This document shows positions 14,964 to 64,000 of a stretch of DNA of 64,000 nt, piece by piece (position 1 is the stretch's first letter; each line of letters begins with the position of its first letter). The translations under genes were made by a program, and so were the position numbers. The notes under the pieces were generated by a model, which worked only from the letters and a program-made list of their open reading frames with translations, ran no database searches and was not told the DNA's origin. Source of the stretch: Haliotis cracherodii (taxonomy: Eukaryota). The DNA is taken from NCBI RefSeq assembly GCF_022045235.1, contig NW_027266279.1, forward strand, positions 3,410,001-3,474,000. The letters are read 5' to 3'.

Positions 14964-15075
14964 TGAAGTCGTTTCTCAAAGTTGGCATTGAATAGTGTGG
15001 TGTAGCCAACGAGGCTATGACAACGATGACATCAAATGTCCAACATTTGATAGAAATGTGAAGAGCCTGTTGAGT

Positions 15076-15719
15076 TTAACCATGGTGGCCACCGCCTCCA
15101 TGGCCACCTCCTCCATGGCCGCCGCCACCGTGACCACCGCCGCCGCCGCCGCCACCATGACCACCTCCGTGGCCGCCACCTCCATGTCCGCCGCCACCAT
15201 GACCCCCACCACCTTTGCCGCCTCCTCCGTGGCCGCCACCCCCTTTGCCACCGCCTCCTTTTCCGCCACCTCCTCCGTGGCCGCCACCTCCTTTGCCACC
15301 GCCTCCTTTGCCACCACCTCCTTTGCCACCACCTCCTTTGCCACCGCCTCCTTTGCCACCGCCTCCCTTTCCACCGCCTCCCTTTCCACCGCCTCCATGT
15401 CCTCCTCCGCCTCCTTTGCCGCCACCCCCTCCGCGGCCACCATAGGCAGAGCCAAAGAAGGCTGTGAACACTAGAAAGGAGAACAGTGCATCTGTAGTTA
15501 AATGTCTTTAAAGAACAACGCAAGAATATAGTTTTCAACCTCATAATGTTGCCAATTACCTTTTGTACGCTCTTTAAGTCACGTTGTTGTAGAAAATACG
15601 CAATGAATTAAAAGATAAGTGAATTTATCAGTCCACATTTCAATAGAACTCACACAGCTCACGTTTGAAAGGTTGAACTTACCCAAGGCCACAACGAGTG
15701 CAATTTTATAGAGCTGCAT
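15076..15719 (-). CDS. Secreted Gly/Lys/His-rich protein copy 1, 143 aa; exons 15719-15683 and 15470-15076
   Basis: Donor G|GTAAGT at 15682, acceptor TCCTTTCTAG|TG at 15471; the join gives a signal peptide in frame with the Gly repeat; one extra GGGGK and an H>R change near the mature N-terminus. Confidence 0.9.
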
Positions 15720-15758
15720 CTTCACAGTTACGTCTATCCACAGTAGAATAAACGGTGT

Positions 15759-15794
15759 GAATGACCATATAGCAAATACACAAGGCCTTTTATA
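15759..15794 (-). promoter_or_regulatory. Core promoter of copy 1: TATAAAA (15794-15788) and Inr-like TCATTC (+1 A at ~15762), present in every unit
   Basis: TATA-to-Inr spacing ~32 nt; 43-nt 5'UTR to the ATG at 15719 (context GAAGATG). Confidence 0.8.
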
Positions 15795-17545
15795 CAAATG
15801 GATAAGGAAATCAGGACACTATGAATCGAAATACTCCCAATGGAGAAAGAAAGAGAACAAGTTCTATTTTGACTTTTTCCTTAACTTGTATTTGTAAACT
15901 AACACCAGATTATATAATATCACCTTGGCATTGGAGAGTTTCATTCTTTATTATTTACGTCTTCCTGAATAACCATCAAAACCTGCTGTGCATTTGTTAC
16001 GTAAGGTGGCGCCCCTTGGATGTTTCTCTGTTGGATTAAATGCAAGGTGCACTGACTCATCCAATGAATTCAAAGCAAATATGACATACAAAAAAATGAA
16101 TGGACAGATGTCTATAAAATGCAAGAACAATGATTAGCTGTTAATATCCTGTTACTATAGGTTTCGTTATGCAGTTTCTTGGTCCCATCAATGACTATTG
16201 TAAAAGACGTATATCTGAAATGAGCAAACAGTAGATACTGCATGCTTTTCATTTGATGAAAATACACCGATATTTATGGAATTACAACACGTACTACATG
16301 CCTCCATCGCCTTATATGCTGCTCGTAGCACCACACATACACATACTGTAAGTAATATCTACTCAATAATGGACACAGAAGTGACCGTGTAGCCACTTAT
16401 ACACGAGATATTTACACCTTTCTGAGAAGCGTAGGGATACAATAGGGCTACAGTCTGAAAGCAGAATATGAGACCGCTCCATGTCACACATCTGAGTTGC
16501 TTTGTTCAAAGCAGTTAAAAGAAAGCTAGACAATTAATTCAACTATTGTAGTCTGCATGTTTAAAATATTTCTTTGAGCTCTTTCCACACGATCGAAATC
16601 GCGTACCAATATATGCTGACCGCTGTAACCTGTAAGGAGCATACTATCTCCATTTGACTCAGCAATACAGTAAACTAAATGTAATGTCAACGGTATTACA
16701 TTTAAGAAGGAGTGCTAAATGACATCCTATTATGGTGTGCGGATAGTGTATCAATGCAGTTAGCACACTGATAGTCAAATGGACAGGTGTGAAGTTAATT
16801 AGGTATGGTATGTTGCTACTTTAATACTATTGTAATTCTCCACAAGGTCAAAACTGCTAAAATGCAGAAACGTCTAAAAGTGGACAAGAACAAGGTAGAT
16901 GTGAAGCATTTGGGGACGATTATGTAGGGTTGAAAAATTCTTTAAATCTTGAGACAAAACATATTAGAGGGGAAGAGTTCTGTTTTTGACGCATACACAG
17001 TGAAGACAAAATGTTGAAATACATTAAAAGCAAAATGTTCTCATAGCTTAGATATAAAGGTATTTTGCAATTATCAACGGAATCTGTTAAGCTAATTCTA
17101 GAGACGATGTGTATGATTTCACTACATGAAACTGATATATACCATGTATTTACAATTCTCTTTCCGACAACACAGTCAAGTCAAGAAGTGAATTATTTGC
17201 AATGTTTAATTGTAAATTACCTTTTGTATTAAGAGGATTCATATGCCAACAATGGTACTAAAACTAACCCTCGCTGCAGCTGTTTTTGTAATCAACAGGA
17301 TACGGTTCTCTGTATGTGCGTTTGTATTATACATCATGTACCACATAGGAGATATGTGTTTCTTCTTTAAATTTGCAGGTAAGCAGTAAGTAGATACAAA
17401 GTCGAAAAGACATATTCATTTCATGGTTTTATTTGAAGTCGTTTCTCAAAGTTGGCATTGAATAGTGTGGTGTAGCCAACGAGGCTATGACAACGATGAC
17501 ATCAAATGTCCAACATTTGATAGAAATGTGAAGAGCCTGTTGAGT

Positions 17546-18174
17546 TTAACCATGGTGGCCACCGCCTCCATGGCCACCTCCTCCATGGCCGCCGCCACCG
17601 TGACCACCGCCGCCGCCGCCGCCACCATGACCACCTCCGTGGCCGCCACCTCCATGTCCGCCGCCACCATGACCCCCACCACCTTTGCCGCCTCCTCCGT
17701 GGCCGCCACCCCCTTTGCCACCGCCTCCTTTTCCGCCACCTCCTCCGTGGCCGCCACCTCCTTTGCCACCGCCTCCTTTGCCACCACCTCCTTTGCCACC
17801 GCCTCCTTTGCCACCGCCTCCTTTGCCACCGCCTCCCTTTCCACCGCCTCCATGTCCTCCTCCGCCTCCTTTGCCGCCACCCCCTCCGTGGCCACCATAG
17901 GCAGAGCCAAAGAAGGCTGTGAACACTAGAAAGGAGAACAGTGCATCTGTAGTTAAATGTCTTTAAAGAACAACGCAAGAATATAGTTTTCAACCTCATA
18001 ATGTTGCCAATTACCTTTTGTACGCTCTTTAAGTCACGTTGTTGTAGAAAATACGCAATGAATTAAAAGATAAGTGAATTTATCAGTCCACATTTCAATA
18101 GAACTCACACAGCTCACGTTTGAAAGGTTGAACTTACCCAAGGCCACAACGAGTGCAATTTTATAGAGCTGCAT
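17546..18174 (-). CDS. GKH-rich protein copy 2, 138 aa (modal form); exons 18174-18138 and 17925-17546
   Basis: Same structure as copy 1. Confidence 0.9.
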
Positions 18175-19999
18175 CTTCACAGTTACGTCTATCCACAGTA
18201 GAATAAACGGTGTGAATGACCATATAGCAAATACACAAGGCCTTTTATACAAATGGATAAGGAAATCAGGACACTATGAATCGAAATACTCCCAATGGAG
18301 AAAGAAAGAGAACATGTTCTATTTTGACTTTTTCCTTAACATGTATTTGTAAACTAACACCAGATTATATAATATCACCTTGGCATTGGAGAGTTTCATT
18401 CTTTATTATTTACGTCTTCCTGAATAACCATCAAAACCTGCTGTGCATTTGTTACGTAAGGTGGCGCCCCTTGGATGTTTCTCTGTTGGATTAAATGCAA
18501 GGTGCACTGACTCATCCAATGAATTCAAAGCAAATATGACATACAAAAAAATGAATGGACAGATGTCTATAAAATGCAAGAACAATGATTAGCTGTTAAT
18601 ATCCTGTTACTATAGGTTTCGTTATGCAGTTTCTTGGTCCCATCAATGACTATTGTAAAAGACGTATATCTGAAATGAGCAAACAGTAGATACTGCATGC
18701 TTTTCATTTGATGAAAATACACCGATATTTATGGAATTACAACACGTACTACATACCTCCATCGCCTTATATGCTGCTCGTAGCACCACACATACACACA
18801 CTGCAAGTAATATCTACTCAATAATGGACACAGAAGTGACCGTGCAGCCACTTATACACGAGATATTTACACCTTTCTGAGAAGCGTAGGGATACAATAG
18901 GGCTACAGTCTGAAAGCAGAATATGAGACCGCTCCATGTCACACATCTGAGTTGCTTTGTTCAAAGCAGTTAAAAGAAAGCTAGACAATTAATTCAACTA
19001 TTGTAGTCTGCATGTTTCAAATATTTCTTTGAGCTCTTTCCACACGATCGAAATCGCGTACCAATATATGCTGACCGCTGTAACCTGTAAGGAGCATACT
19101 ATCTCCATTTGACTCAGCAATACAGTAAACTAAATGTAATGTCAACGGTATTACATTTAAGAAGGAGTGCTAAATGACATCCTATTATGGTGTGCGGATA
19201 GTGTATCAATGCAGTTAGCACACTGATAGTCAAATGGACAGGTGTGAAGTTAATTAGGTATGGTATATTGCTACTTTAATACTATTGTAATTCTCCACAA
19301 GGTCAAAACTGCTAAAATGCAGAAACGTCTAAAAGTGGACAAGAACAAGGTAGATGTGAAGCATTTGGGGACGATTAGGTAGGGTTGAAAATTCTTTAAA
19401 TCTTGAGACAAAACATATTAGAGGGGAAGAGTTCTGTTTTTGACGCATACACAGTGAAGACAAAATGTTGAAATACATTAAAAGCAAAATGTTCTCATAG
19501 GATAGATATAAAGGTATTTTGCAATTATCAACGGAATCTGTTAAGCTAATTCTAGAGACGATGTGTATGATTTCACTACATGAAACTGATATATACCATG
19601 TATTTACAATTCTCTTTCCGACAACACAGTCAAGTCAAGAAGTGAATTATTTGCAATGTTTAATTGTAAATTACCTTTTGTATTAGGAGGATTCATATGC
19701 CAACAATGGTACTAAAACTAACTCTCGCTGCAGCTGTTTTTGTAATAAACAGGATACGGTTCTCCGTATGTGCGTTTGTATTATACATCATGTACCACAT
19801 AGGAGATATGTGTTTCTTCTTTAAATTTGCAGGTAAGCAGTAAGTAGATACAAAGTCGAAAAGACATATTCATTTCATGGTTTTATTTGAAGTCGTTTCT
19901 CAAAGTTGGCATTGAATAGTGTGGTGTAGCCAACGAGGCTATGACAACGATGACATCAAATGTCCAACATTTGATAGAAATGTGAAGAGCCTGTTGAGT

Positions 20000-20610
20000 T
20001 TAACCATGGTGGCCACCGCCTCCATGGCCACCTCCTCCATGGCCGCCGCCGCCGCCGCCACCATGACCACCTCCGTGGCCGCCACCTCCATGTCCGCCGC
20101 CACCATGACCCCCACCACCTTTGCCGCCTCCTCCGTGGCCGCCACCCCCTTTGCCACCGCCTCCTTTTCCGCCACCTCCTCCGTGGCCGCCACCTCCTTT
20201 GCCACCGCCTCCTTTGCCACCACCTCCTTTGCCACCGCCTCCTTTGCCACCGCCTCCTTTGCCACCGCCTCCCTTTCCACCGCCTCCATGTCCTCCTCCG
20301 CCTCCTTTGCCGCCACCCCCTCCGTGGCCACCATAGGCAGAGCCAAAGAAGGCTGTGAACACTAGAAAGGAGAACAGTGCATCTGTAGTTAAATGTCTTT
20401 AAAGAACAACGCAAGAATATAGTTTTCAACCTCATAATGTTGCCAATTACCTTTTGTACGCTCTTTAAGTCACGTTGTTGTAGAAAATACGCAATGAATT
20501 AAAAGATAAGTGAATTTATCAGTCCACATTTCAATAGAACTCACACAGCTCACGTTTGAAAGGTTGAACTTACCCAAGGCCACAACGAGTGCAATTTTAT
20601 AGAGCTGCAT
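20000..20610 (-). CDS. GKH-rich protein copy 3, 132 aa (18-bp in-frame deletion)
   Basis: Exons 20610-20574 and 20361-20000. Confidence 0.9.
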
Positions 20611-22435
20611 CTTCACAGTTACGTCTATCCACAGTAGAATAAACGGTGTGAATGACCATATAGCAAATACACAAGGCCTTTTATACAAATGGATAAGGAA
20701 ATCAGGACACTATGAATCGAAATACTCCCAATGGAGAAAGAAAGAGAACAAGTTCTATTTTGAATTTTTCCTTAACATGTATTTGTAAACTAACACCAGA
20801 TTATATAATATCACCTTGGCATTGGAGAGTTTCATTCTTTATTATTTACGTCTTCCTGAATAACCATCAAAACCTGCTGTGCATTTGTTACGTAAGGTGG
20901 CGCCCCTTGGATGTTTCTCTGTTGGATTAAATGCAAGGTGCACTGACTCATCCAATGAATTCAAAGCAAATATGACATACAAAAAAATGAATGGACAGAT
21001 GTCTATAAAATGCAAGAACAATGATTAGCTGTTAATATCCTGTTACTATAGGTTTCGTTATGCAGTTTCTTGGTCAAATCAATGACTATTGTAAAAGACG
21101 TATATCTGAAATGAACAAACAGTAGATACTGCATGCTTTTCATTTGATGAAAATACACCGATATTTATGGAATTACAACACGTACTACATGCCTCCATCG
21201 CCTTATATGCTGCTCGTAGCACCACACATACACATACTGTAAGTAATATCTACTCAATAATGGACACAGAAGTGACCGTGCAGCCACTTATACACGAGAT
21301 ATTTACACCTTTCTGAGAAGCGTAGGGATACAATAGGGCTACAGTCTGAAAGCAGAATATTAGACCGCTCCATGTCACACATCTGAGTTGCTTTGTTCAA
21401 AGCAGTTAAAAGAAAGCTAGACAATTAATTCAACTATTGTAGTCTGCATGTTTAAAATATTTCTTTGAGCTCTTTCCACACGATCGAAATCGCGTACCAA
21501 TATATGCTGACCGCTGTAACCTGTAAGGAGCATACTATCTCCATTTGACTCAGCAATACAGTAAACTAAATGTAATGTCAACGGTATTACATTTAAGAAG
21601 GAGTGCTAAATGACATCCTATTATGGTGTGCGGATAGTGTATCAATGCAGTTAGCACACTGATAGTCAAATGGACAGGTGTGAAGTTAATTAGGTATGGT
21701 ATATTGCTACTTTAATACTATTGTAATTCTCCACAAGGTCAAAACTGCTAAAATGCAGAAACGTCTAAAAGTGGACAAGAACAAGGTAGATGTGAAGCAT
21801 TTGGGGACGATTATGTAGGGTTGAAAATTCTTTAAATCTTGAGACAAAACATATTAGAGGGGAAGAGTTCTGTTTTTGACGCATACACAGTGAAGACAAA
21901 ATGTTGAAATACATTAAAAGCAAAATGTTCTCATAGGATAGATATAAAGGTATTTTGCAATTATCAACGGAATCTGTTAAGCTAATTCTAGAGACGATGT
22001 GTATGATTTCACTACATGAAACTGATATATACCATGTATTTACAATTCTCTTTCCGACAACACAGTCAAGTCAAGAAGTGAATTATTTGCAATGTTTAAT
22101 TGTAAATTACCTTTTGTATTAGGAGGATTCATATGCCAACAATGGTACTAAAACTAACTCTCGCTGCAGCTGTTTTTGTAATAAACAGGATACGGTTCTC
22201 CGTATGTGCGTTTGTATTATACATCATGTACCACATAGGAGATATGTGTTTCTTCTTTAAATTTGCAGGTAAGCAGTAAGTAGATACAAAGTCGAAAAGA
22301 CATATTCATTTCATGGTTTTATTTGAAGTCGTTTCTCAAAGTTGGCATTGAATAGTGTGGTGTAGCCAACGAGGCTATGACAACGATGACATCAAATGTC
22401 CAACATTTGATAGAAATGTGAAGAGCCTGTTGAGT

Positions 22436-23047
22436 TTAACCATGGTGGCCACCGCCTCCATGGCCACCTCCTCCATGGCCGCCGCCGCCGCCGCCACCAT
22501 GACCACCTCCGTGGCCGCCACCTCCATGTCCGCCGCCACCATGACCCCCACCACCTTTGCCGCCTCCTCCGTGGCCGCCACCCCCTTTGCCACCGCCTCC
22601 TTTTCCGCCACCTCCTCCGTGGCCGCCACCTCCTTTGCCACCGCCTCCTTTGCCACCACCTCCTTTGCCACCGCCTCCTTTGCCACCGCCTCCTTTGCCA
22701 CCGCCTCCCTTTCCACCGCCTCCATGTCCTCCTCCGCCTCCTTTGCCGCCACCCCCCTCCGTGGCCACCATAGGCAGAGCCAAAGAAGGCTGTGAACACT
22801 AGAAAGGAGAACAGTGCATCTGTAGTTAAATGTCTTTAAAGAACAACGCAAGAATATAGTTTTCAACCTCATAATGTTGCCAATTACCTTTTGTACGCTC
22901 TTTAAGTCACGTTGTTGTAGAAAATACGCAATGAATTAAAAGATAAGTGAATTTATCAGTCCACATTTCAATAGAACTCACACAGCTCACGTTTGAAAGG
23001 TTGAACTTACCCAAGGCCACAACGAGTGCAATTTTATAGAGCTGCAT
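22436..23047 (-). pseudogene. GKH-rich copy 4 with +1 frameshift (C6 at 22752-22757); pseudogene, alternative-frame allele or sequencing error
   Basis: 6 C where the consensus has 5; the frame shifts just after the signal peptide into an Arg/Trp-rich frame ending at 22392. Confidence 0.6.
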
Positions 23048-24874
23048 CTTCACAGTTACGTCTATCCACAGTAGAATAAACGGTGTGAATGACCATATAG
23101 CAAATACACAAGGCCTTTTATACAAATGGATAAGGAAATCAGGACACTATGAATCGAAATACTCCCAATGGAGAAAGAAAGAGAACAAGTTCTATTTTGA
23201 ATTTTTCCTTAACATGTATTTGTAAACTAACACCAGATTATATAATATCACCTTGGCATTGGAGAGTTTCATTCTTTATTATTTACGTCTTCCTGAATAA
23301 CCATCAAAACCTGCTGTGCATTTGTTACGTAAGGTGGCGCCCCTTGGATGTTTCTCTGTTGGATTAAATGCAAGGTGCACTGACTCATCCAATGAATTCA
23401 AAGCAAATATGACATACAAAAAAATGAATGGACAGATGTCTATAAAATGCAAGAACAATGATTAGCTGTTAATATCCTGTTACTATAGGTTTCGTTATGC
23501 AGTTTCTTGGTCAAATCAATGACTATTGTAAAAGACGTATATCTGAAATGAGCAAACAGTAGATACTGCATGCTTTTCATTTGATGAAAATACACCGATA
23601 TTTATGGAATTACAACACGTACTACATGCCTCCATCGCCTTATATGCTGCTCGTAGCACCACACATACACATACTGTAAGTAATATCTACTCAATAATGG
23701 ACACAGAAGTGACCGTGCAGCCACTTATACACGAGATATTTACACCTTTCTGAGAAGCGTAGGGATACAATAGGGCTACAGTCTGAAAGCAGAATATTAG
23801 ACCGCTCCATGTCACACATCTGAGTTGCTTTGTTCAAAGCAGTTAAAAGAAAGCTAGACAATTAATTCAACTATTGTAGTCTGCATGTTTAAAATATTTC
23901 TTTGAGCTCTTTCCACACGATCGAAATCGCGTACCAATATATGCTGACCGCTGTAACCTGTAAGGAGCATACTATCTCCATTTGACTCAGCAATACAGTA
24001 AACTAAATGTAATGTCAACGGTATTACATTTAAGAAGGAGTGCTAAATGACATCCTATTATGGTGTGCGGATAGTGTATCAATGCAGTTAGCACACTGAT
24101 AGTCAAATGGACAGGTGTGAAGTTAATTAGGTATGGTATATTGCTACTTTAATACTATTGTAATTCTCCACAAGGTCAAAACTGCTAAAATGCAGAAACG
24201 TCTAAAAGTGGACAAGAACAAGGTAGATGTGAAGCATTTGGGGACGATTATGTAGGGTTGAAAATTCTTTAAATCTTGAGACAAAACATATTAGAGGGGA
24301 AGAGTTCTGTTTTTGACGCATACACAGTGAAGACAAAATGTTGAAATACATTAAAAGCAAAATGTTCTCATAGGATAGATATAAAGGTATTTTGCAATTA
24401 TCAACGGAATCTGTTAAGCTAATTCTAGAGACGATGTGTATGATTTCACTACAGGAAACTGATATATACCATGTATTTACAATTCTCTTTCCGACAACAC
24501 AGTCAAGTCAAGAAGTGAATTATTTGCAATGTTTAATTGTAAATTACCTTTTGTATTAGGAGGATTCATATGCCAACAATGGTACTAAAACTAACTCTCG
24601 CTGTGCAGCTGTTTTTGTAATCAACAGGATACGGTTCTCTGTATGTGCATTTGTATTATACATCATGTACCACATAGGAGATATGTGTTTCTTCTTTAAA
24701 TTTGCAGGTAAGCAGTAAGTAGATACAAAGTCGAAAAGACATATTCATTTCATGGTTTTATTTGAAGTCGTTTCTCAAAGTTGGCATTGAATAGTGTGGT
24801 GTAGCCAACGAGGCTATGACAACGATGACATCAAATGTCCAACATTTGATAGAAATGTGAAGAGCCTGTTGAGT

Positions 24875-54290: not shown

Positions 54291-54919
54291 TTAACCATGG
54301 TGGCCACCGCCTCCATGGCCACCTCCTCCATGGCCGCCGCCACCGTGACCACCGCCGCCGCCTCCGCCACCATGACCACCTCCGTGGCCGCCACCTCCAT
54401 GTCCGCCGCCACCATGACCCCCACCACCTTTGCCGCCTCCTCCGTGGCCGCCACCCCCTTTGCCACCGCCTCCTTTTCCGCCACCTCCTCCGTGGCCGCC
54501 ACCTCCTTTGCCACCGCCTCCTTTGCCACCACCTCCTTTGCCACCGCCTCCTTTGCCACCGCCTCCTTTGCCACCGCCTCCCTTTCCACCGCCTCCATGT
54601 CCTCCTCCGCCTCCTTTGCCGCCACCCCCTCCGTGGCCACCATAGGCAGAGCCAAAGAAGGCTGTGAACACTAGAAAGGAGAACAGTGCATCTGTAGTTA
54701 AATGTCTTTAAAGAACAACGCAAGAATATAGTTTTCAACCTCATAATGTTGCCAATTACCTTTTGTACACTCTTTAAGTCACGTTGTTGTAGAAAATACG
54801 CAATGAATTAAAAGATAAGTGAATTTATCAGTCCACATTTCAATAGAACTCACACAGCTCACGTTTGAAAGGTTGAACTTACCCAAGGCCACAACGAGTG
54901 CAATTTTATAGAGCTGCAT
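54291..54919 (-). CDS. GKH-rich protein copy 17, 138 aa
   Basis: Intact; one synonymous Gly codon change. Confidence 0.9.
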
Positions 54920-56744
54920 CTTCACAGTTACGTCTATCCACAGTAGAATAAACGGTGTGAATGACCATATAGCAAATACACAAGGCCTTTTATACAAATG
55001 GATAAGGAAATCAGGACACTATGAATCGAAATACTCCCAATGGAGAAAGAAAGAGAACAAGTTCTAATTTGACTTTTTCCTTAACATGTATTTGTAAACT
55101 AACACCAGATTATATAATATCACCTTGGCATTGGAGAGTTTCATTCTTTATTATTTACGTCTTCCTGAATAACCATCAAAACCTGCTGTGCATTTGTTAC
55201 GTAAGGTGGCGCCCCTTGGATGTTTCTCTGTTGGATTAAATGCAAGGTGCACTGACTCATCCAATGAATTCAAAGCAAATATGACATACAAAAAAATGAA
55301 TGGACAGATGTCTATAAAATGCAAGAACAATGATTAGCTGTTAATATCCTGTTACTATAGGTTTCGTTATGCAGTTTCTTGGTCCCATCAATGACTATTG
55401 TAAAAGACGTATATCTGAAATGAACAAACAGTAGATACTGCATGCTTTTCATTTGATGAAAATACACCGATATTTATGGAATTACAACACGTACTACATG
55501 TCTCCATCGCCTTATATGCTGCTCGTAGCACCACACATACACACACTGCAAGTAATATCTACTCAATAATGGACACAGAAGTGACCGTGTAGCCACTTAT
55601 ACACGAGATATTTACACCTTTCTGAGAAGCGTAGGGATACAATAGGGCTACAGTCTGAAAGCAGAATATGAGACCGCTCCATGTCACACATCTGAGTTGC
55701 TTTGTTCAAAACAGTTAAAAGAAAGCTAGACAATTAATTCAACTATTGTAGTCTGCATGTTTAAAATATTTCTTTGAGCTCTTTCCACACGATCGAAATC
55801 GCCTACCAATATATGCTGACCGCTGTAACCTGTAAGGAGCATACTATCTCCATTTGACTCAGCAATACAGTAAACTAAATGTAATGTCAACGGTATTACA
55901 TTTAAGAAGGAGTGCTAAATGACATCCTATTATGGTGTGCGGATAGTGTATCAATGCAGTTAGCACACTGATAGTCAAATGGACAGGTGTGAAGTTAATT
56001 AGGTATGGTATGTTGCTACTTTAATACTATTGTAATTCTCCACAAGGTCAAAACTGCTAAAATGCAGAAAATTCTAAAAGTGGACAAGAACAAGGTAGAT
56101 GTGAAGCATTTGGGGACGATTATGTAGGGTTGAAAATTCTTTAAATCTTGAGACAAAACATATTAGAGGGGAAGAGTTCTGTTTTTGACGCATACACAGT
56201 GAAGACAAAATGTTGAAATACATTAAAAGCAAAATGTTCTCATAGCTTAGATATAAAGGTATTTTGCAATTATCAACGGAATCTGTTAAGCTAATTCTAG
56301 AGACGATGTGTATGATTTCACTAGTGGAAACTGATATATACCATGTATTTACAATTCTCTTTCCGACAACACAGTCAAGTCAAGAAGTGAATTATTTGCA
56401 ATGTTTAATTGTAAATTACCTTTTGTATTAGGAGGATTCATATGCCAACAATGGTACTAAAACTAACTCTCGCTGCAGCTGTTTTTGTAATAAACAGGAT
56501 ACGGTTCTCTGTATGTGCGTTTGTATTATACATCATGTACCACATAGGAGATATGTGTTTCTTCTTTAAATTTGCAGGTAAGCAGTAAGTAGATACAAAG
56601 TCGAAAAGACATATTCATTTCATGGTTTTATTTGAAGTCGTTTCTCAAAGTTGGCATTGAATAGTGTGGTGTAGCCAACGAGGCTATGACAACGATGACA
56701 TCAAATGTCCAACATTTGATAGAAATGTGAAGAGCCTGTTGAGT

Positions 56745-57373
56745 TTAACCATGGTGGCCACCGCCTCCATGGCCACCTCCTCCATGGCCGCCGCCACCGT
56801 GACCACCGCCGCCGCCGCCGCCACCATGACCACCTCCGTGGCCGCCACCTCCATGTCCGCCGCCACCATGACCCCCACCACCTTTGCCGCCTCCTCCGTG
56901 GCCGCCACCCCCTTTGCCACCGCCTCCTTTTCCGCCACCTCCTCCGTGGCCGCCACCTCCTTTGCCACCGCCTCCTTTGCCACCACCTCCTTTGCCACCG
57001 CCTCCTTTGCCACCGCCTCCTTTGCCACCGCCTCCCTTTCCACCGCCTCCATGTCCTCCTCCGCCTCCTTTGCCGCCACCCCCTCCGTGGCCACCATAGG
57101 CAGAGCCAAAGAAGGCTGTGAACACTAGAAAGGAGAACAGTGCATCTGTAGTTAAATGTCTTTAAAGAACAACGCAAGAATATAGTTTTCAACCTCATAA
57201 TGTTGCCAATTACCTTTTGTACGCTCTTTAAGTCACGTTGTTGTAGAAAATACGCAATGAATTAAAAGATAAGTGAATTTATCAGTCCACATTTCAATAG
57301 AACTCGCACAGCTCACGTTTGAAAGGTTGAACTTACCCAAGGCCACAACGAGTGCAATTTTATAGAGCTGCAT
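56745..57373 (-). CDS. GKH-rich protein copy 18, 138 aa
   Basis: Intact; ATG read directly at 57373. Confidence 0.9.
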
Positions 57374-59207
57374 CTTCACAGTTACGTCTATCCACAGTAG
57401 AATAAACGGTGTGAATGATCATATAGCGAATACACAAGGCCTTTTATACAAATGGATAAGGAAATCAGGACACTATGAATCGAAATACTCCCAATGGAGA
57501 AAGAAAGAGAACAAGTTCTATTTTGACTTTTTCCTTAACATGTATTTGTAAACTAACACCAGATTATATAATATCACCTTGGCATTGGAGAGTTTCATTC
57601 TTTTTTATTTACGTCTTCCTGAATAACCATCAAAACCTGCTGTGCATTTGTTACGTAAGGTGGCGCCCCTTGGATGTTTCTCTGTTGGATTAAATGCAAG
57701 GTGCACTGACTCATCCAATGAATTCAAAGCAAATATGACATACAAAAAAATGAATGGACAGATGTCTATAAAATGCAAGAACAATGATTAGCTGTTAATA
57801 TCCTGTTACTATAGGTTTCGTTATGCAGTTTCTTGGTCCCATCAATGACTATTGTAAAAGACGTATATCTGAAATGAGCAAACAGTAGATACTGCATGCT
57901 TTTCATTTGATGAAAATACACCGATATTTATGGAATTACAACACGTACTACATGCCTCCATCGCCTTATATGCTACTCGTAGCACCACACATACACATAC
58001 TGTAAGTAATATCTACTCAATAATGGACACAGAAGTGACCGTGTAGCCACTTATACACGAGATATTTACACCTTTCTGAGAAGCGTAGGGATACAATAGG
58101 GCTACAGTCTGAAAGCAGAATATGAGACCGCTCCATGTCACACATCTGAGTTGCTTTGTTCAAAGCAGTTAAAAGAAAGCTAGACAATTAATTCAACTAT
58201 TGTAGTCTGCATGTTTCAAATATTTCTTTGAGCTCTTTCCACACGATCGAAATCGCCTACCAATATATGCTGACCGCTGTAACCTGTAAGGAGCATTCTA
58301 TCTCCATTTGACTCAGCAATACAGTAAACTAAATGTAATGTCAACGGTATTACATTTAAGAAGGAGTGCTAAATGACATCCTATTATGGTGTGCGGATAG
58401 TGTATCAATGCAGTTAGCACACTGATAGTCAAATGGACAGGTGTGAAGTTAATTAGGTATGGTATGTTGCTACTTTAATACTATTGTAATTCTCCACAAG
58501 GTCAAAACTGCTAAAATGCAGAAACGTCTAAAAGTGGACAAGAACAAGGCAGATGTGAAGCATTTGGGGACGATTATGTACAATGTAGGGTTGAAAATTC
58601 TTTAAATCTTGAGACAAAACATATTAGAGGGGAAGAGTTCTGTTTTTGACGCATACACAGTGAAGACAAAATGTTGAAATACATTAAAAGCAAAATGTTC
58701 TCATAGCTTAGATATAAAGGTATTTTGCAATTATCAACGGAATCTGTTAAGCTAATTCTAGAGACGATGTGTATGATTTCACTAGTGGAAACTGATATAT
58801 ACCATGTATTTACAATTCGCTTTCCGACAACACAGTCAAGTCAAGAAGTGAATTATTTGCAATGTTTAATTGTAAATTACCTTTTGTATTAGGAGGATTC
58901 ATATGCCAACAATGGTACTAAAACTAACTCTCGCTGTGCAGCTGTTTTTGTAATAAACAGGATACTGTTCTCACTATGTGCGTTTGTATTATACATCATG
59001 TACCACATAGGAGATATGTGTTTCTTCTTTGAATTTGCAGGTAAGCAGTAAGTAGATACAAAGTTGAAAAGACATATTCATTTCATGGTTTTATTTGAAG
59101 TCGTTTCTCAAAGTTGACATTGAATAGTGTGGTGTAGCCAACGAGGCTATGACAACGATGACATCAAATGTCCAGCATTTGATAGAAATGTGAAGAGCCT
59201 GTTGAGT

Positions 59208-59878
59208 TTAACCATGGTGGCCACCTCCTCCATGGCCACCTCCTCCATGGCCGCCGCCACCGTGACCACCTCCGTGGCCACCACCACCGTGACCACCGCC
59301 ACCGCCGCCGCCACCATGACCACCTCCGTGGCCGCCACCTCCATGTCCGCCGCCACCATGACCCCCACCACCTTTGCCGCCTCCTCCGTGGCCGCCACCC
59401 CCTTTGCCACCGCCTCCTTTTCCACCACCTCCTCCGTGGCCGCCACCTCCTTTGCCACCGCCTCCTTTGCCACCACCTCCTTTGCCACCGCCTCCTTTGC
59501 CACCGCCTCCTTTGCCACCGCCTCCTTTGCCACCGCCTCCCTTTCCACCGCCTCCATGTCCTCCTCCGCCTCCTTTGCCGCCACCCCCTCCGTGGCCACC
59601 ATAGGCAGAGCCAAAGAAGGCTGTGAACACTAGAAAGGAGAACAGTGCATCTGTAGTTAAATGTCTTTAAAGAACAACGCAAGAATATAGTTTTCAACCT
59701 CATAATGTTGCCAATTACCTTTTGTACGCTCTTTAAGTCACGTTGTTGTAGAAAATACGCAATGAATTAAAAGATAAGTGAATTTATCAGTCCACATTTC
59801 AATAGAACTCACACAGCTCACGTTTGAAAGGTTGAACTTACCCAAGGCCACAACGAGTGCAATTTTATAGAGCTGCAT
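59208..59878 (-). CDS. GKH-rich protein copy 19, 152 aa (+42 bp in frame)
   Basis: Extra GGGGK plus an extra 9-aa Gly/His segment. Confidence 0.9.
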
Positions 59879-61712
59879 CTTCACAGTTACGTCTATCCAC
59901 AGTAGAATAAACGGTGTGAATGATCATATAGCGAATACACAAGGCCTTTTATACAAATGGATAAGGAAATCAGGACACTATGAATCGAAATACTCCCAAT
60001 GGAGAAAGAAAGAGAACAAGTTCTATTTTGACTTTTTCCTTAACATGTATTTGTAAACTAACACCAGATTATATAATATCACCTTGGCATTGGAGAGTTT
60101 CATTCTTTTTTATTTACGTCTTCCTGAATAACCATCAAAACCTGCTGTGCATTTGTTACGTAAGGTGGCGCCCCTTGGATGTTTCTCTGTTGGATTAAAT
60201 GCAAGGTGCACTGACTCATCCAATGAATTCAAAGCAAATATGACATACAAAAAAATGAATGGACAGATGTCTATAAAATGCAAGAACAATGATTAGCTGT
60301 TAATATCCTGTTACTATAGGTTTCGTTATGCAGTTTCTTGGTCCCATCAATGACTATTGTAAAAGACGTATATCTGAAATGAGCAAACAGTAGATACTGC
60401 ATGCTTTTCATTTGATGAAAATACACCGATATTTATGGAATTACAACACGTACTACATGCCTCCATCGCCTTATATGCTACTCGTAGCACCACACATACA
60501 CATACTGTAAGTAATATCTACTCAATAATGGACACAGAAGTGACCGTGTAGCCACTTATACACGAGATATTTACACCTTTCTGAGAAGCGTAGGGATACA
60601 ATAGGGCTACAGTCTGAAAGCAGAATATGAGACCGCTCCATGTCACACATCTGAGTTGCTTTGTTCAAAGCAGTTAAAAGAAAGCTAGACAATTAATTCA
60701 ACTATTGTAGTCTGCATGTTTCAAATATTTCTTTGAGCTCTTTCCACACGATCGAAATCGCCTACCAATATATGCTGACCGCTGTAACCTGTAAGGAGCA
60801 TTCTATCTCCATTTGACTCAGCAATACAGTAAACTAAATGTAATGTCAACGGTATTACATTTAAGAAGGAGTGCTAAATGACATCCTATTATGGTGTGCG
60901 GATAGTGTATCAATGCAGTTAGCACACTGATAGTCAAATGGACAGGTGTGAAGTTAATTAGGTATGGTATGTTGCTACTTTAATACTTTTGTAATTCTCC
61001 ACAAGGTCAAAACTGCTAAAATGCAGAAACGTCTAAAAGTGGACAAGAACAAGGCAGATGTGAAGCATTTGGGGACGATTATGTACAATGTAGGGTTGAA
61101 AATTCTTTAAATCTTGAGACAAAACATATTAGAGGGGAAGAGTTCTGTTTTTGACGCATACACAGTGAAGACAAAATGTTGAAATACATTAAAAGCAAAA
61201 TGTTCTCATAGCTTAGATATAAAGGTATTTTGCAATTATCAACGGAATCTGTTAAGCTAATTCTAGAGACGATGTGTATGATTTCACTAGTGGAAACTGA
61301 TATATACCATGTATTTACAATTCTCTTTCCGACAACACAGTCAAGTCAAGAAGTGAATTATTTGCAATGTTTAATTGTAAATTACCTTTTGTATTAGGAG
61401 GATTCATATGCCAACAATGGTACTAAAACTAACTCTCGCTGTGCAGCTGTTTTTGTAATAAACAGGATACTGTTCTCACTATGTGCGTTTGTATTATACA
61501 TCATGTACCACATAGGAGATATGTGTTTCTTCTTTGAATTTGCAGGTAAGCAGTAAGTAGATACAAAGTTGAAAAGACGTATTCATTTCATGGTTTTATT
61601 TGAAGTCGTTTCTCAAAGTTGACATTGAATAGTGTGGTGTAGCCAACGAGGCTATGACAACGATGACATCAAATGTCCAGCATTTGATAGAAATGTGAAG
61701 AGCCTGTTGAGT

Positions 61713-62368
61713 TTAACCATGGTGGCCACCGCCTCCATGGCCACCTCCTCCATGGCCGCCGCCACCGTGACCACCTCCGTGGCCACCACCACCGTGACCA
61801 CCGCCACCGCCGCCGCCACCATGACCACCTCCGTGGCCGCCACCTCCATGTCCGCCGCCACCATGACCCCCACCACCTTTGCCGCCTCCTCCGTGGCCGC
61901 CACCCCCTTTGCCACCGCCTCCTTTTCCACCACCTCCTCCGTGGCCGCCACCTCCTTTGCCACCGCCTCCTTTGCCACCACCTCCTTTGCCACCGCCTCC
62001 TTTGCCACCGCCTCCTTTGCCACCGCCTCCCTTTCCACCGCCTCCATGTCCTCCTCCGCCTCCTTTGCCGCCACCCCCTCCGTGGCCACCATAGGCAGAG
62101 CCAAAGAAGGCTGTGAACACTAGAAAGGAGAACAGTGCATCTGTAGTTAAATGTCTTTAAAGAACAACGCAAGAATATAGTTTTCAACCTCATAATGTTG
62201 CCAATTACCTTTTGTACGCTCTTTAAGTCACGTTGTTGTAGAAAATACGCAATGAATTAAAAGATAAGTGAATTTATCAGTCCACATTTCAATAGAACTC
62301 ACACAGCTCACGTTTGAAAGGTTGAACTTACCCAAGGCCACAACGAGTGCAATTTTATAGAGCTGCAT
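61713..62368 (-). CDS. GKH-rich protein copy 20, 147 aa (+27 bp in frame)
   Basis: Extra 9-aa Gly/His segment shared with copy 19. Confidence 0.9.
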
Positions 62369-64000
62369 CTTCACAGTTACGTCTATCCACAGTAGAATAA
62401 ACGGTGTGAATGATCATATAGCGAATACACAAGGCCTTTTATACAAATGGATAAGGAAATCAGGACACTATGAATCGAAATACTCCCAATGGAGAAAGAA
62501 AGAGAACAAGTTCTATTTTGACTTTTTCCTTAACATGTATTTGTAAACTAACACCAGATTATATAATATCACCTTGGCATTGGAGAGTTTCATTCTTTTT
62601 TATTTACGTCTTCCTGAATAACCATCAAAACCTGCTGTGCATTTGTTACGTAAGGTGGCGCCCCTTGGATGTTTCTCTGTTGGATTAAATGCAAGGTGCA
62701 CTGACTCATCCAATGAATTCAAAGCAAATATGACATACAAAAAAATGAATGGACAGATGTCTATAAAATGCAAGAACAATGATTAGCTGTTAATATCCTG
62801 TTACTATAGGTTTCGTTATGCAGTTTCTTGGTCCCATCAATGACTATTGTAAAAGACGTATATCTGAAATGAGCAAACAGTAGATACTGCATGCTTTTCA
62901 TTTGATGAAAATACACCGATATTTATGGAATTACAACACGTACTACATGCCTCCATCGCCTTATATGCTACTCGTAGCACCACACATACACATACTGTAA
63001 GTAATATCTACTCAATAATGGACACAGAAGTGACCGTGTAGCCACTTATACACGAGATATTTACACCTTTCTGAGAAGCGTAGGGATACAATAGGGCTAC
63101 AGTCTGAAAGCAGAATATGAGACCGCTCCATGTCACACATCTGAGTTGCTTTGTTCAAAGCAGTTAAAAGAAAGCTAGACAATTAATTCAACTATTGTAG
63201 TCTGCATGTTTCAAATATTTCTTTGAGCTCTTTCCACACGATCGAAATCGCCTACCAATATATGCTGACCGCTGTAACCTGTAAGGAGCATACTATCTCC
63301 ATTTGACTCAGCAATACAGTAAACTAAATGTAATGTCAACGGTATTACATTTAAGAAGGAGTGCTAAATGACATCCTATTATGGTGTGCGGATAGTGTAT
63401 CAATGCAGTTAGCACACTGATAGTCAAATGGACAGGTGTGAAGTTAATTAGGTATGGTATGTTGCTACTTTAATACTATTGTAATTCTCCACAAGGTCAA
63501 AACTGCTAAAATGCAGAAACGTCTAAAAGTGGACAAGAACAAGGTAGATGTGAAGCATTTGGGGACGATTATGTAGGGTTGAAAATTCTTTAAATCTTGA
63601 GACAAAACATATTAGAGGGGAAGAGTTCTGTTTTTGACGCATACACAGTGAAGACAAAATGTTGAAATACATTAAAAGCAAAATGTTCTCATAGCTTAGA
63701 TATAAAGGTATTTTGCAATTATCAACGGAATCTGTTAAGCTAATTCTAGAGACGATGTGTATGATTTCACTAGTGGAAACTGATATATACCATGTATTTA
63801 CAATTCTCTTTCCGACAACACAGTCAAGTCAAGAAGTGAATTATTTGCAATGTTTAATTGTAAATTACCTTTTGTATTAGGAGGATTCATATGCCAACAA
63901 TGGTACTAAAACTAACTCTCGCTGTGCAGCTGTTTTTGTAATAAACAGGATACTGTTCTCACTATGTGCGTTTGTATTATACATCATGTACCACATAGGA

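What the first reader, a model, noticed from the sequence alone, without database searches (positions are those of the whole stretch)
15076..62443. At least 20 tandem copies of a spliced gene for a secreted three-amino-acid (Gly/Lys/His) polymer
Seen: what looks like a 2.45-kb satellite is an array of complete transcription units (TATA, Inr, exon 1 MQLYKIALVVAL, 212-nt phase-1 GTAAGT...TTTCTAG intron, exon 2, AATAAA). Splicing yields the signal peptide MQLYKIALVVALVFTAFFGSAYG, with A-Y-G fitting the -3/-1 rule. The modal mature chain is 115 aa: 92 Gly, 10 Lys, 13 His (80% Gly, no Cys, aromatic or acidic residues). Known: Gly-rich cationic secreted peptides include the antimicrobial acanthoscurrins and ctenidins (spiders), holotricin-3/tenecin-3 (beetles) and shepherins (plant, GGH repeats); Gly/His-rich structural proteins include Nereis jaw Nvjp-1 and squid-beak His-rich proteins. 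I do not recognise this protein as a named gene. Inference: amplification on the scale of histone or rDNA arrays points to a bulk-secreted product, either an antimicrobial/mucosal effector or a metal-hardened or adhesive biomaterial. Low-complexity masking would hide it from standard annotation.
Basis: partly seen in the sequence, partly recalled or inferred. Interest (0 to 1): 0.93.

Follow-up and report, generated by a model that had tools for sequence, protein, structure and literature searches.

The report
Abalone Gly/Lys/His polymer gene array
An abalone chromosome carries 27 near-identical head-to-tail copies (20 in this window) of a small two-exon gene for a probably secreted, disordered 8-kDa chain built only from glycine, lysine and histidine. 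It is the lysine-bearing branch of a family of about 120 genes for which I found no published description, and the polymer's function is untested.

Summary
The window holds 20 head-to-tail units (2,436-2,505 bp, 96-99.8% identical) of a minus-strand gene: TATA box, Inr-like site, 37-nt coding exon 1, 212-nt phase-1 intron, exon 2, AATAAA.

- **Copies:** Seventeen encode a signal-peptide-like leader plus a pure Gly/Lys/His chain (modal 115 aa: 92 G, 10 K, 13 H). Three carry +1 G slips.
- **Extent:** The array runs past the window (27 genes). A K-richer sister array 1.8 Mb away has 28.
- **Family:** Both are homologous to two Gly/His arrays (16 and 48 genes) that this scan had already reported on other DNA of this genome. 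That gives about 120 genes.
- **Gene reality:** Promoter, exons and UTRs are conserved between arrays, while intron and spacer have decayed to noise. Variation is mostly synonymous, so the gene is real and constrained.
- **Expression:** Probable RNA runs cover exon 2 and the 3'UTR only. No read across the splice was seen.
- **Relatives:** No similar protein, Pfam family, solved structure or paper was found.
- **Function (untested):** I favour a bulk-secreted, pH- and metal-responsive polycationic matrix or cross-link polymer (0.4) over an antimicrobial peptide (0.25).
- **Organism:** An abalone; the assembly size matches black abalone.

The parts
13679..64000 (-). Array A as far as the window shows it: 20 head-to-tail units plus the spacer after the last gene. 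It continues beyond the window to C16:3490745 (27 genes).
61595..62443 (-). gene copy 1 (TATA to AATAAA), ATG 62368; mature 124 aa G99 K10 H15
59090..59953 (-). gene copy 2, ATG 59878; mature 129 aa G103 K11 H15
56627..57448 (-). gene copy 3, ATG 57373; modal 115-aa chain
54173..54994 (-). gene copy 4, ATG 54919; modal chain
51719..52540 (-). gene copy 5, ATG 52465; modal chain
49265..50086 (-). gene copy 6, ATG 50011; modal chain
46811..47632 (-). gene copy 7, ATG 47557; modal chain
44357..45178 (-). gene copy 8, ATG 45103; modal chain
41903..42724 (-). gene copy 9, ATG 42649; modal chain
39449..40270 (-). gene copy 10, ATG 40195; modal chain
36995..37816 (-). gene copy 11 (reference copy), ATG 37741; modal chain
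34540..35362 (-). gene copy 12, ATG 35287; +1 G in a G5 run near 34826 shifts the frame to an Arg/Trp-rich tail
32086..32907 (-). gene copy 13, ATG 32832; 115 aa with one Gly to Asp change
29632..30453 (-). gene copy 14, ATG 30378; modal chain
27195..27999 (-). gene copy 15, ATG 27924; +1 G near 27463 (frame-shifted) and an 18-nt deletion
24757..25560 (-). gene copy 16, ATG 25485; 109 aa with one Gly to Ser change
22318..23122 (-). gene copy 17, ATG 23047; +1 G near 22757 (frame-shifted early) and an 18-nt deletion
19882..20685 (-). gene copy 18, ATG 20610; 109 aa G87 K10 H12
17428..18249 (-). gene copy 19, ATG 18174; modal chain
14958..15794 (-). gene copy 20 (last of the array), ATG 15719; 120 aa with one His to Arg change
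37809..37816 (-). reference copy: TATA box TATAAAAG. It is kept in all 20 copies, and as TATATAAG in arrays B, C and D.
37781..37786 (-). reference copy: Inr-like TCATTC; the A at 37784 is the inferred transcription start, 32 nt after the TATA
   Evidence: read; the start site is inferred, not measured
37705..37741 (-). reference copy: coding part of exon 1 (12 codons plus 1 nt; n- and h-region of the leader)
37493..37704 (-). reference copy: 212-nt phase-1 intron, GTAAGT...TTTCTAG
37461..37492 (-). reference copy: start of exon 2, the rest of the leader (V)FTAFFGSAYG. Predicted signal-peptidase site after A-Y-G.
   Evidence: the cleavage site is inferred
37113..37460 (-). reference copy: mature Gly/Lys/His chain (115 codons) plus TAA stop. 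The Lys block comes first and the His block last; the chain ends HHG.
36995..37000 (-). reference copy: AATAAA, 112 nt after the stop
37817..38180 (-). reference copy: upstream promoter region conserved with arrays B, C and D (64-68% against 51% for a shuffled control)

Best explanation
Shown or strongly supported (about 0.9):
- Array A is a tandem array of intact, constrained two-exon protein genes of an abalone.
- Each gene has its own TATA/Inr promoter and poly(A) signal.
- The product is a 23-residue signal-peptide-like leader followed directly by an intrinsically disordered chain of about 8.3 kDa made only of Gly (80%), Lys (9%) and His (11%).
- The chain has a (GGGGK)n block followed by a (GGGGH)n block, and ends HHG.
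- It is the Lys-bearing branch of a four-array family of about 120 genes. The other branches are nearly pure Gly/His.

Inferred (about 0.4): the polymer is a bulk-secreted extracellular building or cross-linking component, not a signalling or lytic peptide.
- High gene dosage supplies large amounts from few secretory cells.
- In acidic secretory granules the His residues are protonated. Net charge is about +20 at pH 5.5, which keeps the chain soluble.
- On release into seawater (pH about 8) the His block loses its charge. It becomes free to coordinate Zn or Cu or to self-associate.
- The Lys block stays cationic (about +9). It can bind polyanions such as sulfated mucus glycans or acidic matrix proteins. 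It can also offer amine and imidazole nucleophiles for quinone tanning by the Tyr-rich Gly proteins that this genome also encodes in large arrays.
- The result would be a gel-stiffening, adhesive or hardening co-monomer of mucus, periostracum, jaw or radula.
For: Gene reality:
- All 20 copies have identical exon 1, donor, 212-nt intron and acceptor, and all keep the TATA box and AATAAA.
- Exon 2 has no in-frame ATG, and a stop lies 12 codons upstream in the intron, so it needs exon 1.
- The four arrays keep the 37-nt exon 1, the intron phase, the GH start and the HHG end.
- Between arrays the promoter is 64-68% identical, exon 1 68-81% and the 3'UTR 59-68%. The intron is 54-59% and the spacer 51-52%, against a shuffled control of 47-52%.
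- Among copies of equal length, 21 variable sites are synonymous and 6 are not, where 28% synonymous is expected (p = 1.6e-7).
- The GGG codon is avoided (3 of 92 Gly codons).
- Three probable RNA runs from three studies have contigs on exon 2 and the 3'UTR only, none on intron or spacer. A DNA run covers the whole unit evenly.

Bulk or structural reading:
- 27 + 28 + 16 + 48 homogenised copies.
- The charge switch was computed, and the chain is predicted disordered (pLDDT 44.9).
- The chain has no hydrophobic residue at all.
- Precedents:
  - Glycera MTP is a Gly/His jaw protein that phase-separates with Cu. Nvjp-1 assembles with pH and Zn (PMC9999432).
  - Zn drives shepherin I into fibrils (PMC10698721).
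  - Lys and His side chains cross-link with cuticular quinones (PMC7504153).
  - Earlier scan reports describe large arrays for secreted Gly/Tyr-rich proteins in the same genome (not checked here).
Against: - There are no tissue, protein or metal data of any kind.
- No read joins exon 1 to exon 2, and exon 1 is not covered in the probable RNA runs.
- The chain itself has no Tyr/DOPA, Cys or Gln for covalent cross-links, so it would need a partner.
- 6-8 kDa is small for a structural protein.
- Several features also fit antimicrobial peptides: small size, net positive charge, no pro-region, a terminal Gly (a possible amidation signal) and a Gly-His N-terminus.
- Published abalone shell proteomes do not mention such a protein. 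Trypsin-based proteomics would hardly detect it, though.
Confidence: 0.4

Rival explanations
1. Host-defence peptide. The mature cationic Gly/Lys/His chain, possibly C-terminally amidated after removal of the last Gly, is released into mucus or haemolymph. It inhibits microbes or fungi by a non-lytic, perhaps Zn- or Cu-dependent mechanism, as Gly/His-rich peptides of plants and insects do.
For: - The chain is small (6-8 kDa), strongly basic (pI about 11, +9 to +11 at pH 8.1), and follows the leader directly without a pro-region.
- A terminal Gly after HH is conserved in all four arrays.
- The N-terminus is Gly-His, as in armadillidin (PMC5031766).
- Shepherin I (68% Gly, GGH repeats) becomes antifungal with Zn (PMC10698721).
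- Gly-rich cationic acanthoscurrins and ctenidins are haemocyte peptides (PMC7554965).
Against: - There is no hydrophobic or aromatic residue, so no amphipathic surface.
- Charge density is low (one charge per five residues) and would be largely screened at seawater ionic strength (inference).
- Known defence-peptide families tend to diversify, whereas these copies are homogenised: 11 of 20 proteins are identical. That points to dosage rather than variety.
- The Gly/His-only sister arrays would be almost uncharged at pH 8.
- No expression or activity data exist.
Confidence: 0.25
2. Soluble metal or proton buffer. The chain stays in solution, in haemolymph, extrapallial fluid or gut, and chelates Cu, Zn or Ni through its Gly-His N-terminus and His block, or buffers pH near 6-7. 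For example, it could handle copper for haemocyanin or control carbonate chemistry.
For: - Each chain has 13 His, a conserved N-terminal Gly-His and a C-terminal His-His.
- A His at position 2 of a free N-terminus is a known Cu(II) site, as in the tripeptide GHK (my own knowledge, not tested here).
- Abalones turn over much copper for haemocyanin (my own knowledge).
Against: - Nothing links the gene to a fluid or to a metal.
- Lys blocks are not needed for chelation.
- About 120 gene copies for a buffer would be unprecedented.
Confidence: 0.1
3. No function: a satellite that happens to contain a decayed or never-expressed gene, or an assembly over-expansion of a few copies.
For: - Five of the 27 array-A copies are frame-shifted.
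- The splice junction is not seen in reads.
- Read-depth copy number is not calibrated.
- No predicted protein in two very large collections matched.
Against: - 50 of 55 A and B copies keep an open Gly/Lys/His frame.
- Variation is mostly synonymous.
- Exons, promoter and UTRs are conserved across four arrays while intron and spacer have decayed to noise.
- Probable RNA contigs are restricted to exon 2 and the 3'UTR.
- An independent DNA run shows the same 2,454-bp tandem period at uniformly high depth.
- The published assembly is HiFi at 37x (PMC9709981).
Confidence: 0.05
4. Dual coding. The +1 G slips are real and used, so some copies secrete an Arg/Trp-rich peptide (a typical antimicrobial composition) behind the same leader.
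For: - The slips sit in G5 runs at only two sites, and they recur in five copies.
- The +1 frame stays open into the 3'UTR.
- The assembly's average indel quality of QV 48.7 predicts well under one false indel in these 10 kb (PMC9709981).
Against: - An open +1 frame is a trivial by-product of GGN repeats.
- Array B has no G5 run and no slip, as expected for plain slippage or homopolymer error.
- Nothing shows that these copies are expressed.
- Errors concentrate in homopolymers inside repeats.
Confidence: 0.05

Closest known systems
Gly/His secreted-polypeptide gene arrays of the same abalone genome (arrays C on C16 and D on C23; earlier scan findings s1-829562 and s1-836062)
   Same: - Same gene plan: 37-nt coding exon 1, phase-1 intron, rest of the leader and the whole mature chain in exon 2.
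- Alignable promoter blocks, TATA box, 5'UTR and 3'UTR.
- The mature chain starts GH and ends HHG.
- Head-to-tail arrays on the minus strand.
   Different: - Arrays C and D have no Lys or only 2-3, with 19-27 His. Arrays A and B have 10-12 Lys in a GGGGK block and fewer His.
- The leader sequence differs (MQLYKIALVVAL against MRLLNVAVVVVL).
- Unit length is 2.45 or 2.28 kb against 3.09 or 2.8 kb.
Glycera dibranchiata jaw multi-tasking protein (MTP)
   Same: A secreted, signal-peptide-bearing, low-complexity protein dominated by Gly and His with a little Lys. It is disordered, and His-metal coordination and phase separation drive its assembly (PMC9999432).
   Different: - MTP is 30 kDa with 49% Gly and 40% His, and also has Asp, Glu and Ala. 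It never has more than two Gly in a row.
- The abalone chain is 8 kDa with 80% Gly in runs of 4-8, 11% His and 9% Lys, and no acidic residue.
- There is no detectable sequence relation.
- MTP is an annelid protein, not a mollusc one.
Nereis virens jaw protein Nvjp-1
   Same: Gly/His-rich with GGH-type repeats. A rise in pH and Zn trigger its assembly (PMC9999432).
   Different: Nvjp-1 is 32-40 kDa, with 36% Gly and 27% His plus Asp, Glu and Tyr, so its alphabet is much broader.
[quoted passage not shown]
   Same: Almost pure Gly/His peptides (66-68% Gly) ending in HG. Zn binding changes structure and activity.
   Different: They are plant peptides of 28-38 aa cut from a longer precursor. The repeat is GGH, not G4H. 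They lack Lys, contain Tyr, and are not tandemly amplified (my own knowledge).
Gly-rich cationic peptides of arthropods (acanthoscurrins, ctenidins, armadillidins; holotricin-3 and tenecin-3)
   Same: Linear, Cys-free, Gly-rich, cationic and secreted. Armadillidin also starts with GH and is amidated.
   Different: All carry hydrophobic or aromatic residues (Leu, Phe, Tyr) or Arg or Gln. None is a three-letter polymer, and none is known from arrays of dozens of identical genes (my own knowledge).
Pearl-oyster shell matrix families shematrin and KRMP
   Same: Small secreted mollusc proteins with Gly-rich repeats and a Lys-rich basic part, lineage-specific and clustered (PMC4944945; details from my own knowledge).
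   Different: They are rich in Tyr and have other residues. The abalone chain has no Tyr and no sequence similarity.
Dosage arrays such as histone repeats and fish antifreeze-protein arrays
   Same: Dozens of homogenised head-to-tail units, each a complete small gene, read as selection for output (my own knowledge).
   Different: The products are unrelated.

Membership tests
Abalone Gly/His(-Lys) secreted-polymer gene family (arrays C and D of this genome) | Two-exon plan: 37-nt coding exon 1 ending in a split codon, phase-1 intron of 212-236 nt, exon 2 with the rest of the leader and the whole mature chain | tested here: met
Abalone Gly/His(-Lys) secreted-polymer gene family (arrays C and D of this genome) | Alignable promoter, 5'UTR and 3'UTR blocks above the shuffled control | tested here: met
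   promoter 64-66% and 3'UTR 59-64% against a control of 51%
Abalone Gly/His(-Lys) secreted-polymer gene family (arrays C and D of this genome) | Mature chain begins GH, ends HHG, and uses only Gly, His and optionally Lys | tested here: met
Abalone Gly/His(-Lys) secreted-polymer gene family (arrays C and D of this genome) | Homogenised head-to-tail tandem array | tested here: met
Gly/His-rich antimicrobial peptides (shepherins, holotricin-3, tenecin-3) | Composition dominated by Gly and His in short GGH-type repeats | tested here: inconclusive
   Gly plus His is 91% of the chain, but His is only 11%. The period is G4H, and a Lys block is present.
Gly/His-rich antimicrobial peptides (shepherins, holotricin-3, tenecin-3) | Detectable sequence relation to a described member | tested here: not met
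   No hit in Pfam, PDB, 1.84 billion representatives, 5.8 billion clusters or the Atlas. Low complexity limits the value of these blanks.
Gly/His-rich antimicrobial peptides (shepherins, holotricin-3, tenecin-3) | Measured antimicrobial or antifungal activity | not testable with these tools
   needs synthetic peptide assays
Arachnid and crustacean Gly-rich cationic peptides (acanthoscurrin, ctenidin, armadillidin) | Gly-rich cationic chain that also carries hydrophobic or aromatic residues | tested here: not met
   The modal chain has no residue other than G, K and H.
Arachnid and crustacean Gly-rich cationic peptides (acanthoscurrin, ctenidin, armadillidin) | Constitutive expression in haemocytes | not testable with these tools
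   Run metadata are coded, and only one read-laying run was allowed.
Polychaete jaw Gly/His proteins (Glycera MTP, Nereis Nvjp-1) | 27-40 mol% His, at most short Gly runs, 30-40 kDa | tested here: not met
   11% His, Gly runs of 4-8, 8.3 kDa, compared with PMC9999432
Polychaete jaw Gly/His proteins (Glycera MTP, Nereis Nvjp-1) | Located in a metal-hardened jaw and binds Cu or Zn | not testable with these tools
   needs tissue localisation and metal titration
Mollusc shell-matrix Gly-rich basic proteins (shematrin, KRMP) | Gly/Tyr-rich repeats plus a basic Lys-rich part | tested here: not met
   The mature chain has no Tyr.
Classical secretory precursor (signal peptide) | Short charged n-region, hydrophobic h-region of 7-15 residues, small residues at -3 and -1 | tested here: inconclusive
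   - By eye: the n-region MQLYK has one Lys, the h-region is 13 residues, and the c-region is GSAYG.
- The -3/-1 pair A/G is kept as A/G or V/G in arrays B, C and D.
- No predictor was available, and the joined precursor was not sent to any tool.

The most novel reading that the evidence does not exclude
The four arrays encode a graded set of sequence-defined two- or three-letter block copolymers, from pure Gly/His through Gly/His with a few Lys to Lys-rich Gly/Lys/His. They are co-secreted in bulk and assembled outside the cell by the granule-to-seawater pH jump and by Cu or Zn coordination. With Tyr-rich partner proteins they form an abalone material or mucus hardener that nobody has described, because low-complexity masking hides the genes and trypsin proteomics cannot see the chains. 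The ratio of gene copies (48:16:27:28) would then set the recipe.
Probability: 0.2. Interest if true: 0.85.

Novelty: new variant of a known kind. Interest (0 to 1): 0.6.

Why it matters
If the product is made in bulk, abalones have an unrecognised major secreted polymer built from three amino acids. A genome-encoded block layout separates a permanently charged Lys block from a pH- and metal-switchable His block.

- **Materials science:** this is a very simple natural design for coacervating, metal-hardening or adhesive polymers, and it is easy to make recombinantly.
- **Mollusc biology:** whichever role holds, shell, jaw or mucus formation or mucosal defence, one ingredient has escaped both annotation and proteomics.
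- **Genomics:** 120 homogenised copies in four arrays are a clean case of dosage amplification and concerted evolution of a low-complexity coding gene.
- **Annotation pipelines:** the case also warns that repeat masking can hide real genes.

Tried and rejected
Searches for relatives with exon 2 as the query, all blank:
- 5.8-billion-cluster word/HMMER search.
- Full HMMER scan of 1.84 billion representatives.
- ESM Atlas.
- Pfam, also with the exon 2 translations of arrays B, C and D.
- PDB sequences.

Composition-bias handling makes these blanks weak evidence of novelty.

Other steps that led nowhere:
- A literature string search for G4K or G4H runs found no paper. Keyword searches on abalone with glycine-rich or histidine-rich terms found nothing that fits. 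Neither did the abalone shell proteome and mantle secretome papers.
- The last paper search was badly framed and gave only a general quinone review.
- Rfam found no RNA family in the window.
- The spacer has no long ORF and is array-specific, not a dispersed repeat.
- The flanks of the array hold only satellites and a transposase-like fragment, so neighbours give no functional hint.
- A (GGH)n pattern found no family members.
- The (GGGH)n hit on C9 is an internal exon of an unrelated Gly-rich gene.
- The AlphaFold2 model has no structure (pLDDT 44.9), so no fold search was run.
- align_proteins failed internally twice on these sequences. Comparisons were done at DNA level and in scripts instead.
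- An unspliced reading of exon 2 is rejected: there is no ATG, and a stop lies 12 codons upstream.
- The plus-strand Ala/Thr/Ser-rich ORFs and the Arg/Trp-rich alternative frame are rejected as by-products of GGN repeats.

Left out on instruction:
- The joined exon 1 plus exon 2 protein was not sent to any search, look-up or fold tool.
- No signal-peptide predictor was available.

Full report
**What is in the window.**
- Tandem Repeats Finder shows a 15/45-nt GCCACC-type repeat recurring every 2.45 kb from about 15.1 kb to 62.1 kb. Read on the minus strand it is GGN-rich coding sequence.
- A script found 20 exact copies of the 37-nt coding exon 1 (MQLYKIALVVAL plus one base). Each is followed by GTAAGT, an intron of exactly 212 nt ending TTTCTAG, and a second exon.
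- The ATG-to-ATG spacing is 2,454 bp in 11 of 19 intervals (range 2,436-2,505 bp). Whole units, spacer included, are 96.0-99.8% identical.
- All 20 copies keep TATAAAAG 75 nt upstream of the ATG and AATAAA 112 nt after the stop.
- A TCATTC initiator-like site lies 32 nt after the TATA box (read).

**The protein.**
- Exon 2, translated in its own frame, begins FTAFFGSAYG and then holds only three kinds of residue.
- In 12 copies the chain after A-Y-G has 115 residues: 92 Gly, 10 Lys, 13 His. Eleven of these are identical. Other intact copies have 109-129 residues and at most one foreign residue.
- The layout is a GGGGK block followed by a GGGGH block, and the chain ends HHG.
- The modal chain weighs 8,331 Da, with pI 10.95. 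Its computed net charge is +9 at pH 8.1 and +20 at pH 5.5.
- AlphaFold2 gives no structure (mean pLDDT 44.9, no secondary structure).
- The leader, read across the split codon, has one Lys, 13 hydrophobic residues and the small-residue pair A/G at -3/-1.

**Extent and family.**
- The window is C16:3410001-3474000 of a 1.18-Gb assembly.
- The exon-1 pattern occurs exactly 55 times in the genome, always on the minus strand of C16:
  - 27 times in array A (C16:3423679-3490745, of which 20 are in the window);
  - 28 times in array B (C16:5231290-5294933, unit 2,283 bp).
- Array B encodes MQIFKVALVVAL/(V)FTALFGSAYG plus an 85-residue chain of 67 Gly, 12 Lys and 6 His that also ends HHG. All 28 frames are open, and three are cut to 64 residues by a TGA.
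I located them with a (GGGH)n-coding pattern and a second exon-1 pattern:
  - array C: 16 genes at C16:4974338-5021564;
  - array D: 48 genes at C23:68441001-68573594, plus one lone copy.
- Arrays C and D have the same plan:
  - a 37-nt exon 1 (MRLLNVAVVVVL);
  - a phase-1 intron of 230-236 nt;
  - a leader ending A/V-L-G;
  - a mature chain that starts GH and ends HHG.
- Their chains are pure Gly/His (D) or Gly/His with 2-3 Lys (C).
- Promoter, 5'UTR and 3'UTR blocks align among all four arrays.
- The finding is thus the Lys-bearing branch of a family of 119-120 genes. This agrees with the earlier scan reports s1-829562 and s1-836062, which I re-derived independently.

**Is it a real gene?** Four lines of evidence say yes.
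- Exon 2 has no in-frame ATG, and a stop lies 12 codons upstream in the intron, so only splicing to exon 1 gives it a start.
- Conservation is gene-shaped. Between the A/B and C/D branches the identities are:

| Region | Identity |
|---|---|
| Promoter | 64-66% |
| Exon 1 | 68-74% |
| 3'UTR | 59-64% |
| Intron | 54-55% |
| Spacer | 51-52% |
| Shuffled control | 47-52% |

- Among copies of equal length, 21 variable sites are synonymous third positions and 6 change the residue. Only 28% synonymous is expected (binomial p = 1.6e-7). Caveat: exchange between the internal repeats can move third-position variants around, so the test is inflated.
- In three probable RNA runs from three studies, contigs lie only on exon 2 and the 3'UTR (37016-37472) and never on intron or spacer. 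A DNA run covers the whole unit at an even k-mer depth of about 141, and one of its contigs re-enters the unit after 2,454 bases.

Three weaknesses remain:
- The runs are RNA only by the tool's guess.
- No contig covers exon 1.
- No joint over the intron was seen.

The splice is therefore supported by comparison, not by reads.

**Broken copies.**
- Three copies in the window (ATG 35287, 27924, 23047) and two beyond it carry one extra G in a G5 run, at only two sites of exon 2. The frame then runs on as an Arg/Trp-rich tail.
- Array B has no G5 run and no slip. The GGG codon is generally avoided (3 of 92 Gly codons).
- The published assembly's indel quality (QV 48.7, HiFi 37x; PMC9709981) predicts far fewer than five false indels in these 10 kb. 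However, errors concentrate in homopolymers inside repeats. I cannot decide between real pseudogenes and error.

**Organism.**
- The genome has Egg_lysin exons above Pfam's cut-off. One of them is about 75% identical to the abalone sperm lysin in the PDB.
- Its size, 1,182,234,246 bases in 80 pieces, matches the published black abalone primary assembly of 1,182,252,637 bp in 81 scaffolds (PMC9709981).
- I take it to be Haliotis cracherodii, as earlier scan reports did.

**Relatives and literature.**
- With exon 2 as the query nothing was found in the following:
  - Pfam;
  - PDB sequences;
  - 1.84 billion representatives;
  - 5.8 billion clusters;
  - the ESM Atlas.
- The low complexity of the query weakens these blanks.
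- No paper in the held library contains G4K or G4H strings.
- Abalone shell, mantle and peptide papers do not describe such a protein.

**How it most likely works.**

Shown:
- The genes are amplified and constrained.
- The product has a leader and a disordered Gly/Lys/His chain.

Inferred: I favour a bulk extracellular polymer, for four reasons.
- Dozens of homogenised copies point to selection for output, not variety.
- The chain has no hydrophobic residue.
- The family spans pure Gly/His to Lys-rich members, which looks like a set of components.
- The chemistry fits a secretion switch. His is protonated in acidic granules and neutral in seawater, where it can bind Zn or Cu or self-associate. 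Lys stays charged and can bind polyanions. Both side chains are the nucleophiles used in quinone tanning (PMC7504153).

Precedents:
- Cu-driven phase separation of the Gly/His jaw protein MTP of Glycera.
- pH- and Zn-driven assembly of Nereis Nvjp-1 (both PMC9999432).
- Zn-induced fibrils of shepherin I (PMC10698721).

Earlier scan reports of large arrays for secreted Gly/Tyr-rich proteins in this genome (not checked here) would provide the quinone-forming partners.

My odds for the function:

| Reading | Odds |
|---|---|
| Bulk-secreted matrix or cross-link polymer | about 0.4 |
| Antimicrobial or mucosal defence peptide | 0.25 |
| Soluble metal or pH buffer | 0.1 |
| Used frame-shift products | 0.05 |
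| No function or artefact | 0.05 |
| Something not thought of | the remainder |

The defence reading rests on small size, cationic charge, a terminal Gly that may signal amidation, a Gly-His start as in armadillidin, and Zn-dependent shepherin as a model.

**What I left out.**
- The joined exon 1 plus exon 2 protein was never sent to a search, look-up or fold tool. All such calls used exon 2 or the mature part by reference.
- In the script the two exons were read in series only to find the frame and the stop, and only lengths were printed.
- So there was no exact-sequence look-up of the full precursor in public protein sets, and no signal-peptide prediction.
- Only one read-laying run was allowed, so neither the splice junction nor the copy number could be pursued further.

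**Verdict.**
- This is a real and striking locus.
- It is a new variant of a known kind: secreted Gly/His-rich low-complexity proteins, and dosage arrays.
- I found no description of it in the literature available to me.
- It is not new to this scan, which had already reported the family from the Gly/His arrays.

Noticed in passing
window 1643-2807; 3812-4377; 5397-5611: There are satellites left of the array. One has a 44-bp unit, about 26 copies, with a 355-bp higher-order period. Another has a 23-bp unit in two blocks.
   Followed up: no
window 39523-40020 (-), and the same place in every unit: A 165-codon ORF starts at an ATG inside the intron and runs through exon 2 in the +1 frame, giving an Arg/Trp-rich product. 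On the plus strand, 154-159-codon Ala/Thr/Ser-rich ORFs lie over exon 2, for example at 14995-15474 and 39486-39950. I read both as by-products of GGN repeats.
   Followed up: partly
G000:C16:5290725-5291009, 5267928-5268212, 5265642-5265926: Three copies of array B are cut to a 64-residue mature chain by an in-frame TGA. The chain is still pure Gly/Lys/His.
   Followed up: partly
G000:C16:5294646-5294933: A partial 29th unit (the 3' part only, 94% identical) sits at the upstream edge of array B. Similar spacer fragments sit at the upstream edge of array A, at C16:3490158-3490745.
   Followed up: no
L015 (G000:C23:68712089-68712119, + strand): A lone array-D-type exon 1 lies on the opposite strand, 138 kb from array D. 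My pattern did not find its acceptor and exon 2.
   Followed up: no
window about 37955-37969 and 37830-37839, and the aligned places in L001 and L012: Promoter blocks are kept in arrays A, B and C: GTGATAT(A/T)A(T/C)ATAAT about 215-230 nt upstream of the ATG, CTGATTTCCT about 95 nt upstream, and GTGGATA(G/A)ACGTAA in the 5'UTR. They are candidate binding sites for the factor that drives the whole family.
   Followed up: no
L013 3330-3620 (-) = G000:C9:7858330-7858620: This is an exon of an unrelated Gly-rich gene. It has a short (GGGH)n stretch followed by GGL repeats, and a 42-nt satellite lies upstream.
   Followed up: partly
L011 3663-4082 (-) and 5376-7599 (G000:C16:3497663-3501599): These lie right of array A. 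One is a transposase-like ORF fragment, Tc1/mariner-like by my reading and not tested. The other is a 2-kb satellite that stays open in several frames.
   Followed up: no
G000:C7:25189171-25250896 (L016-L018): Four Egg_lysin-family exon hits lie within 60 kb. This is probably the sperm lysin and sp18 gene pair of abalones.
   Followed up: partly
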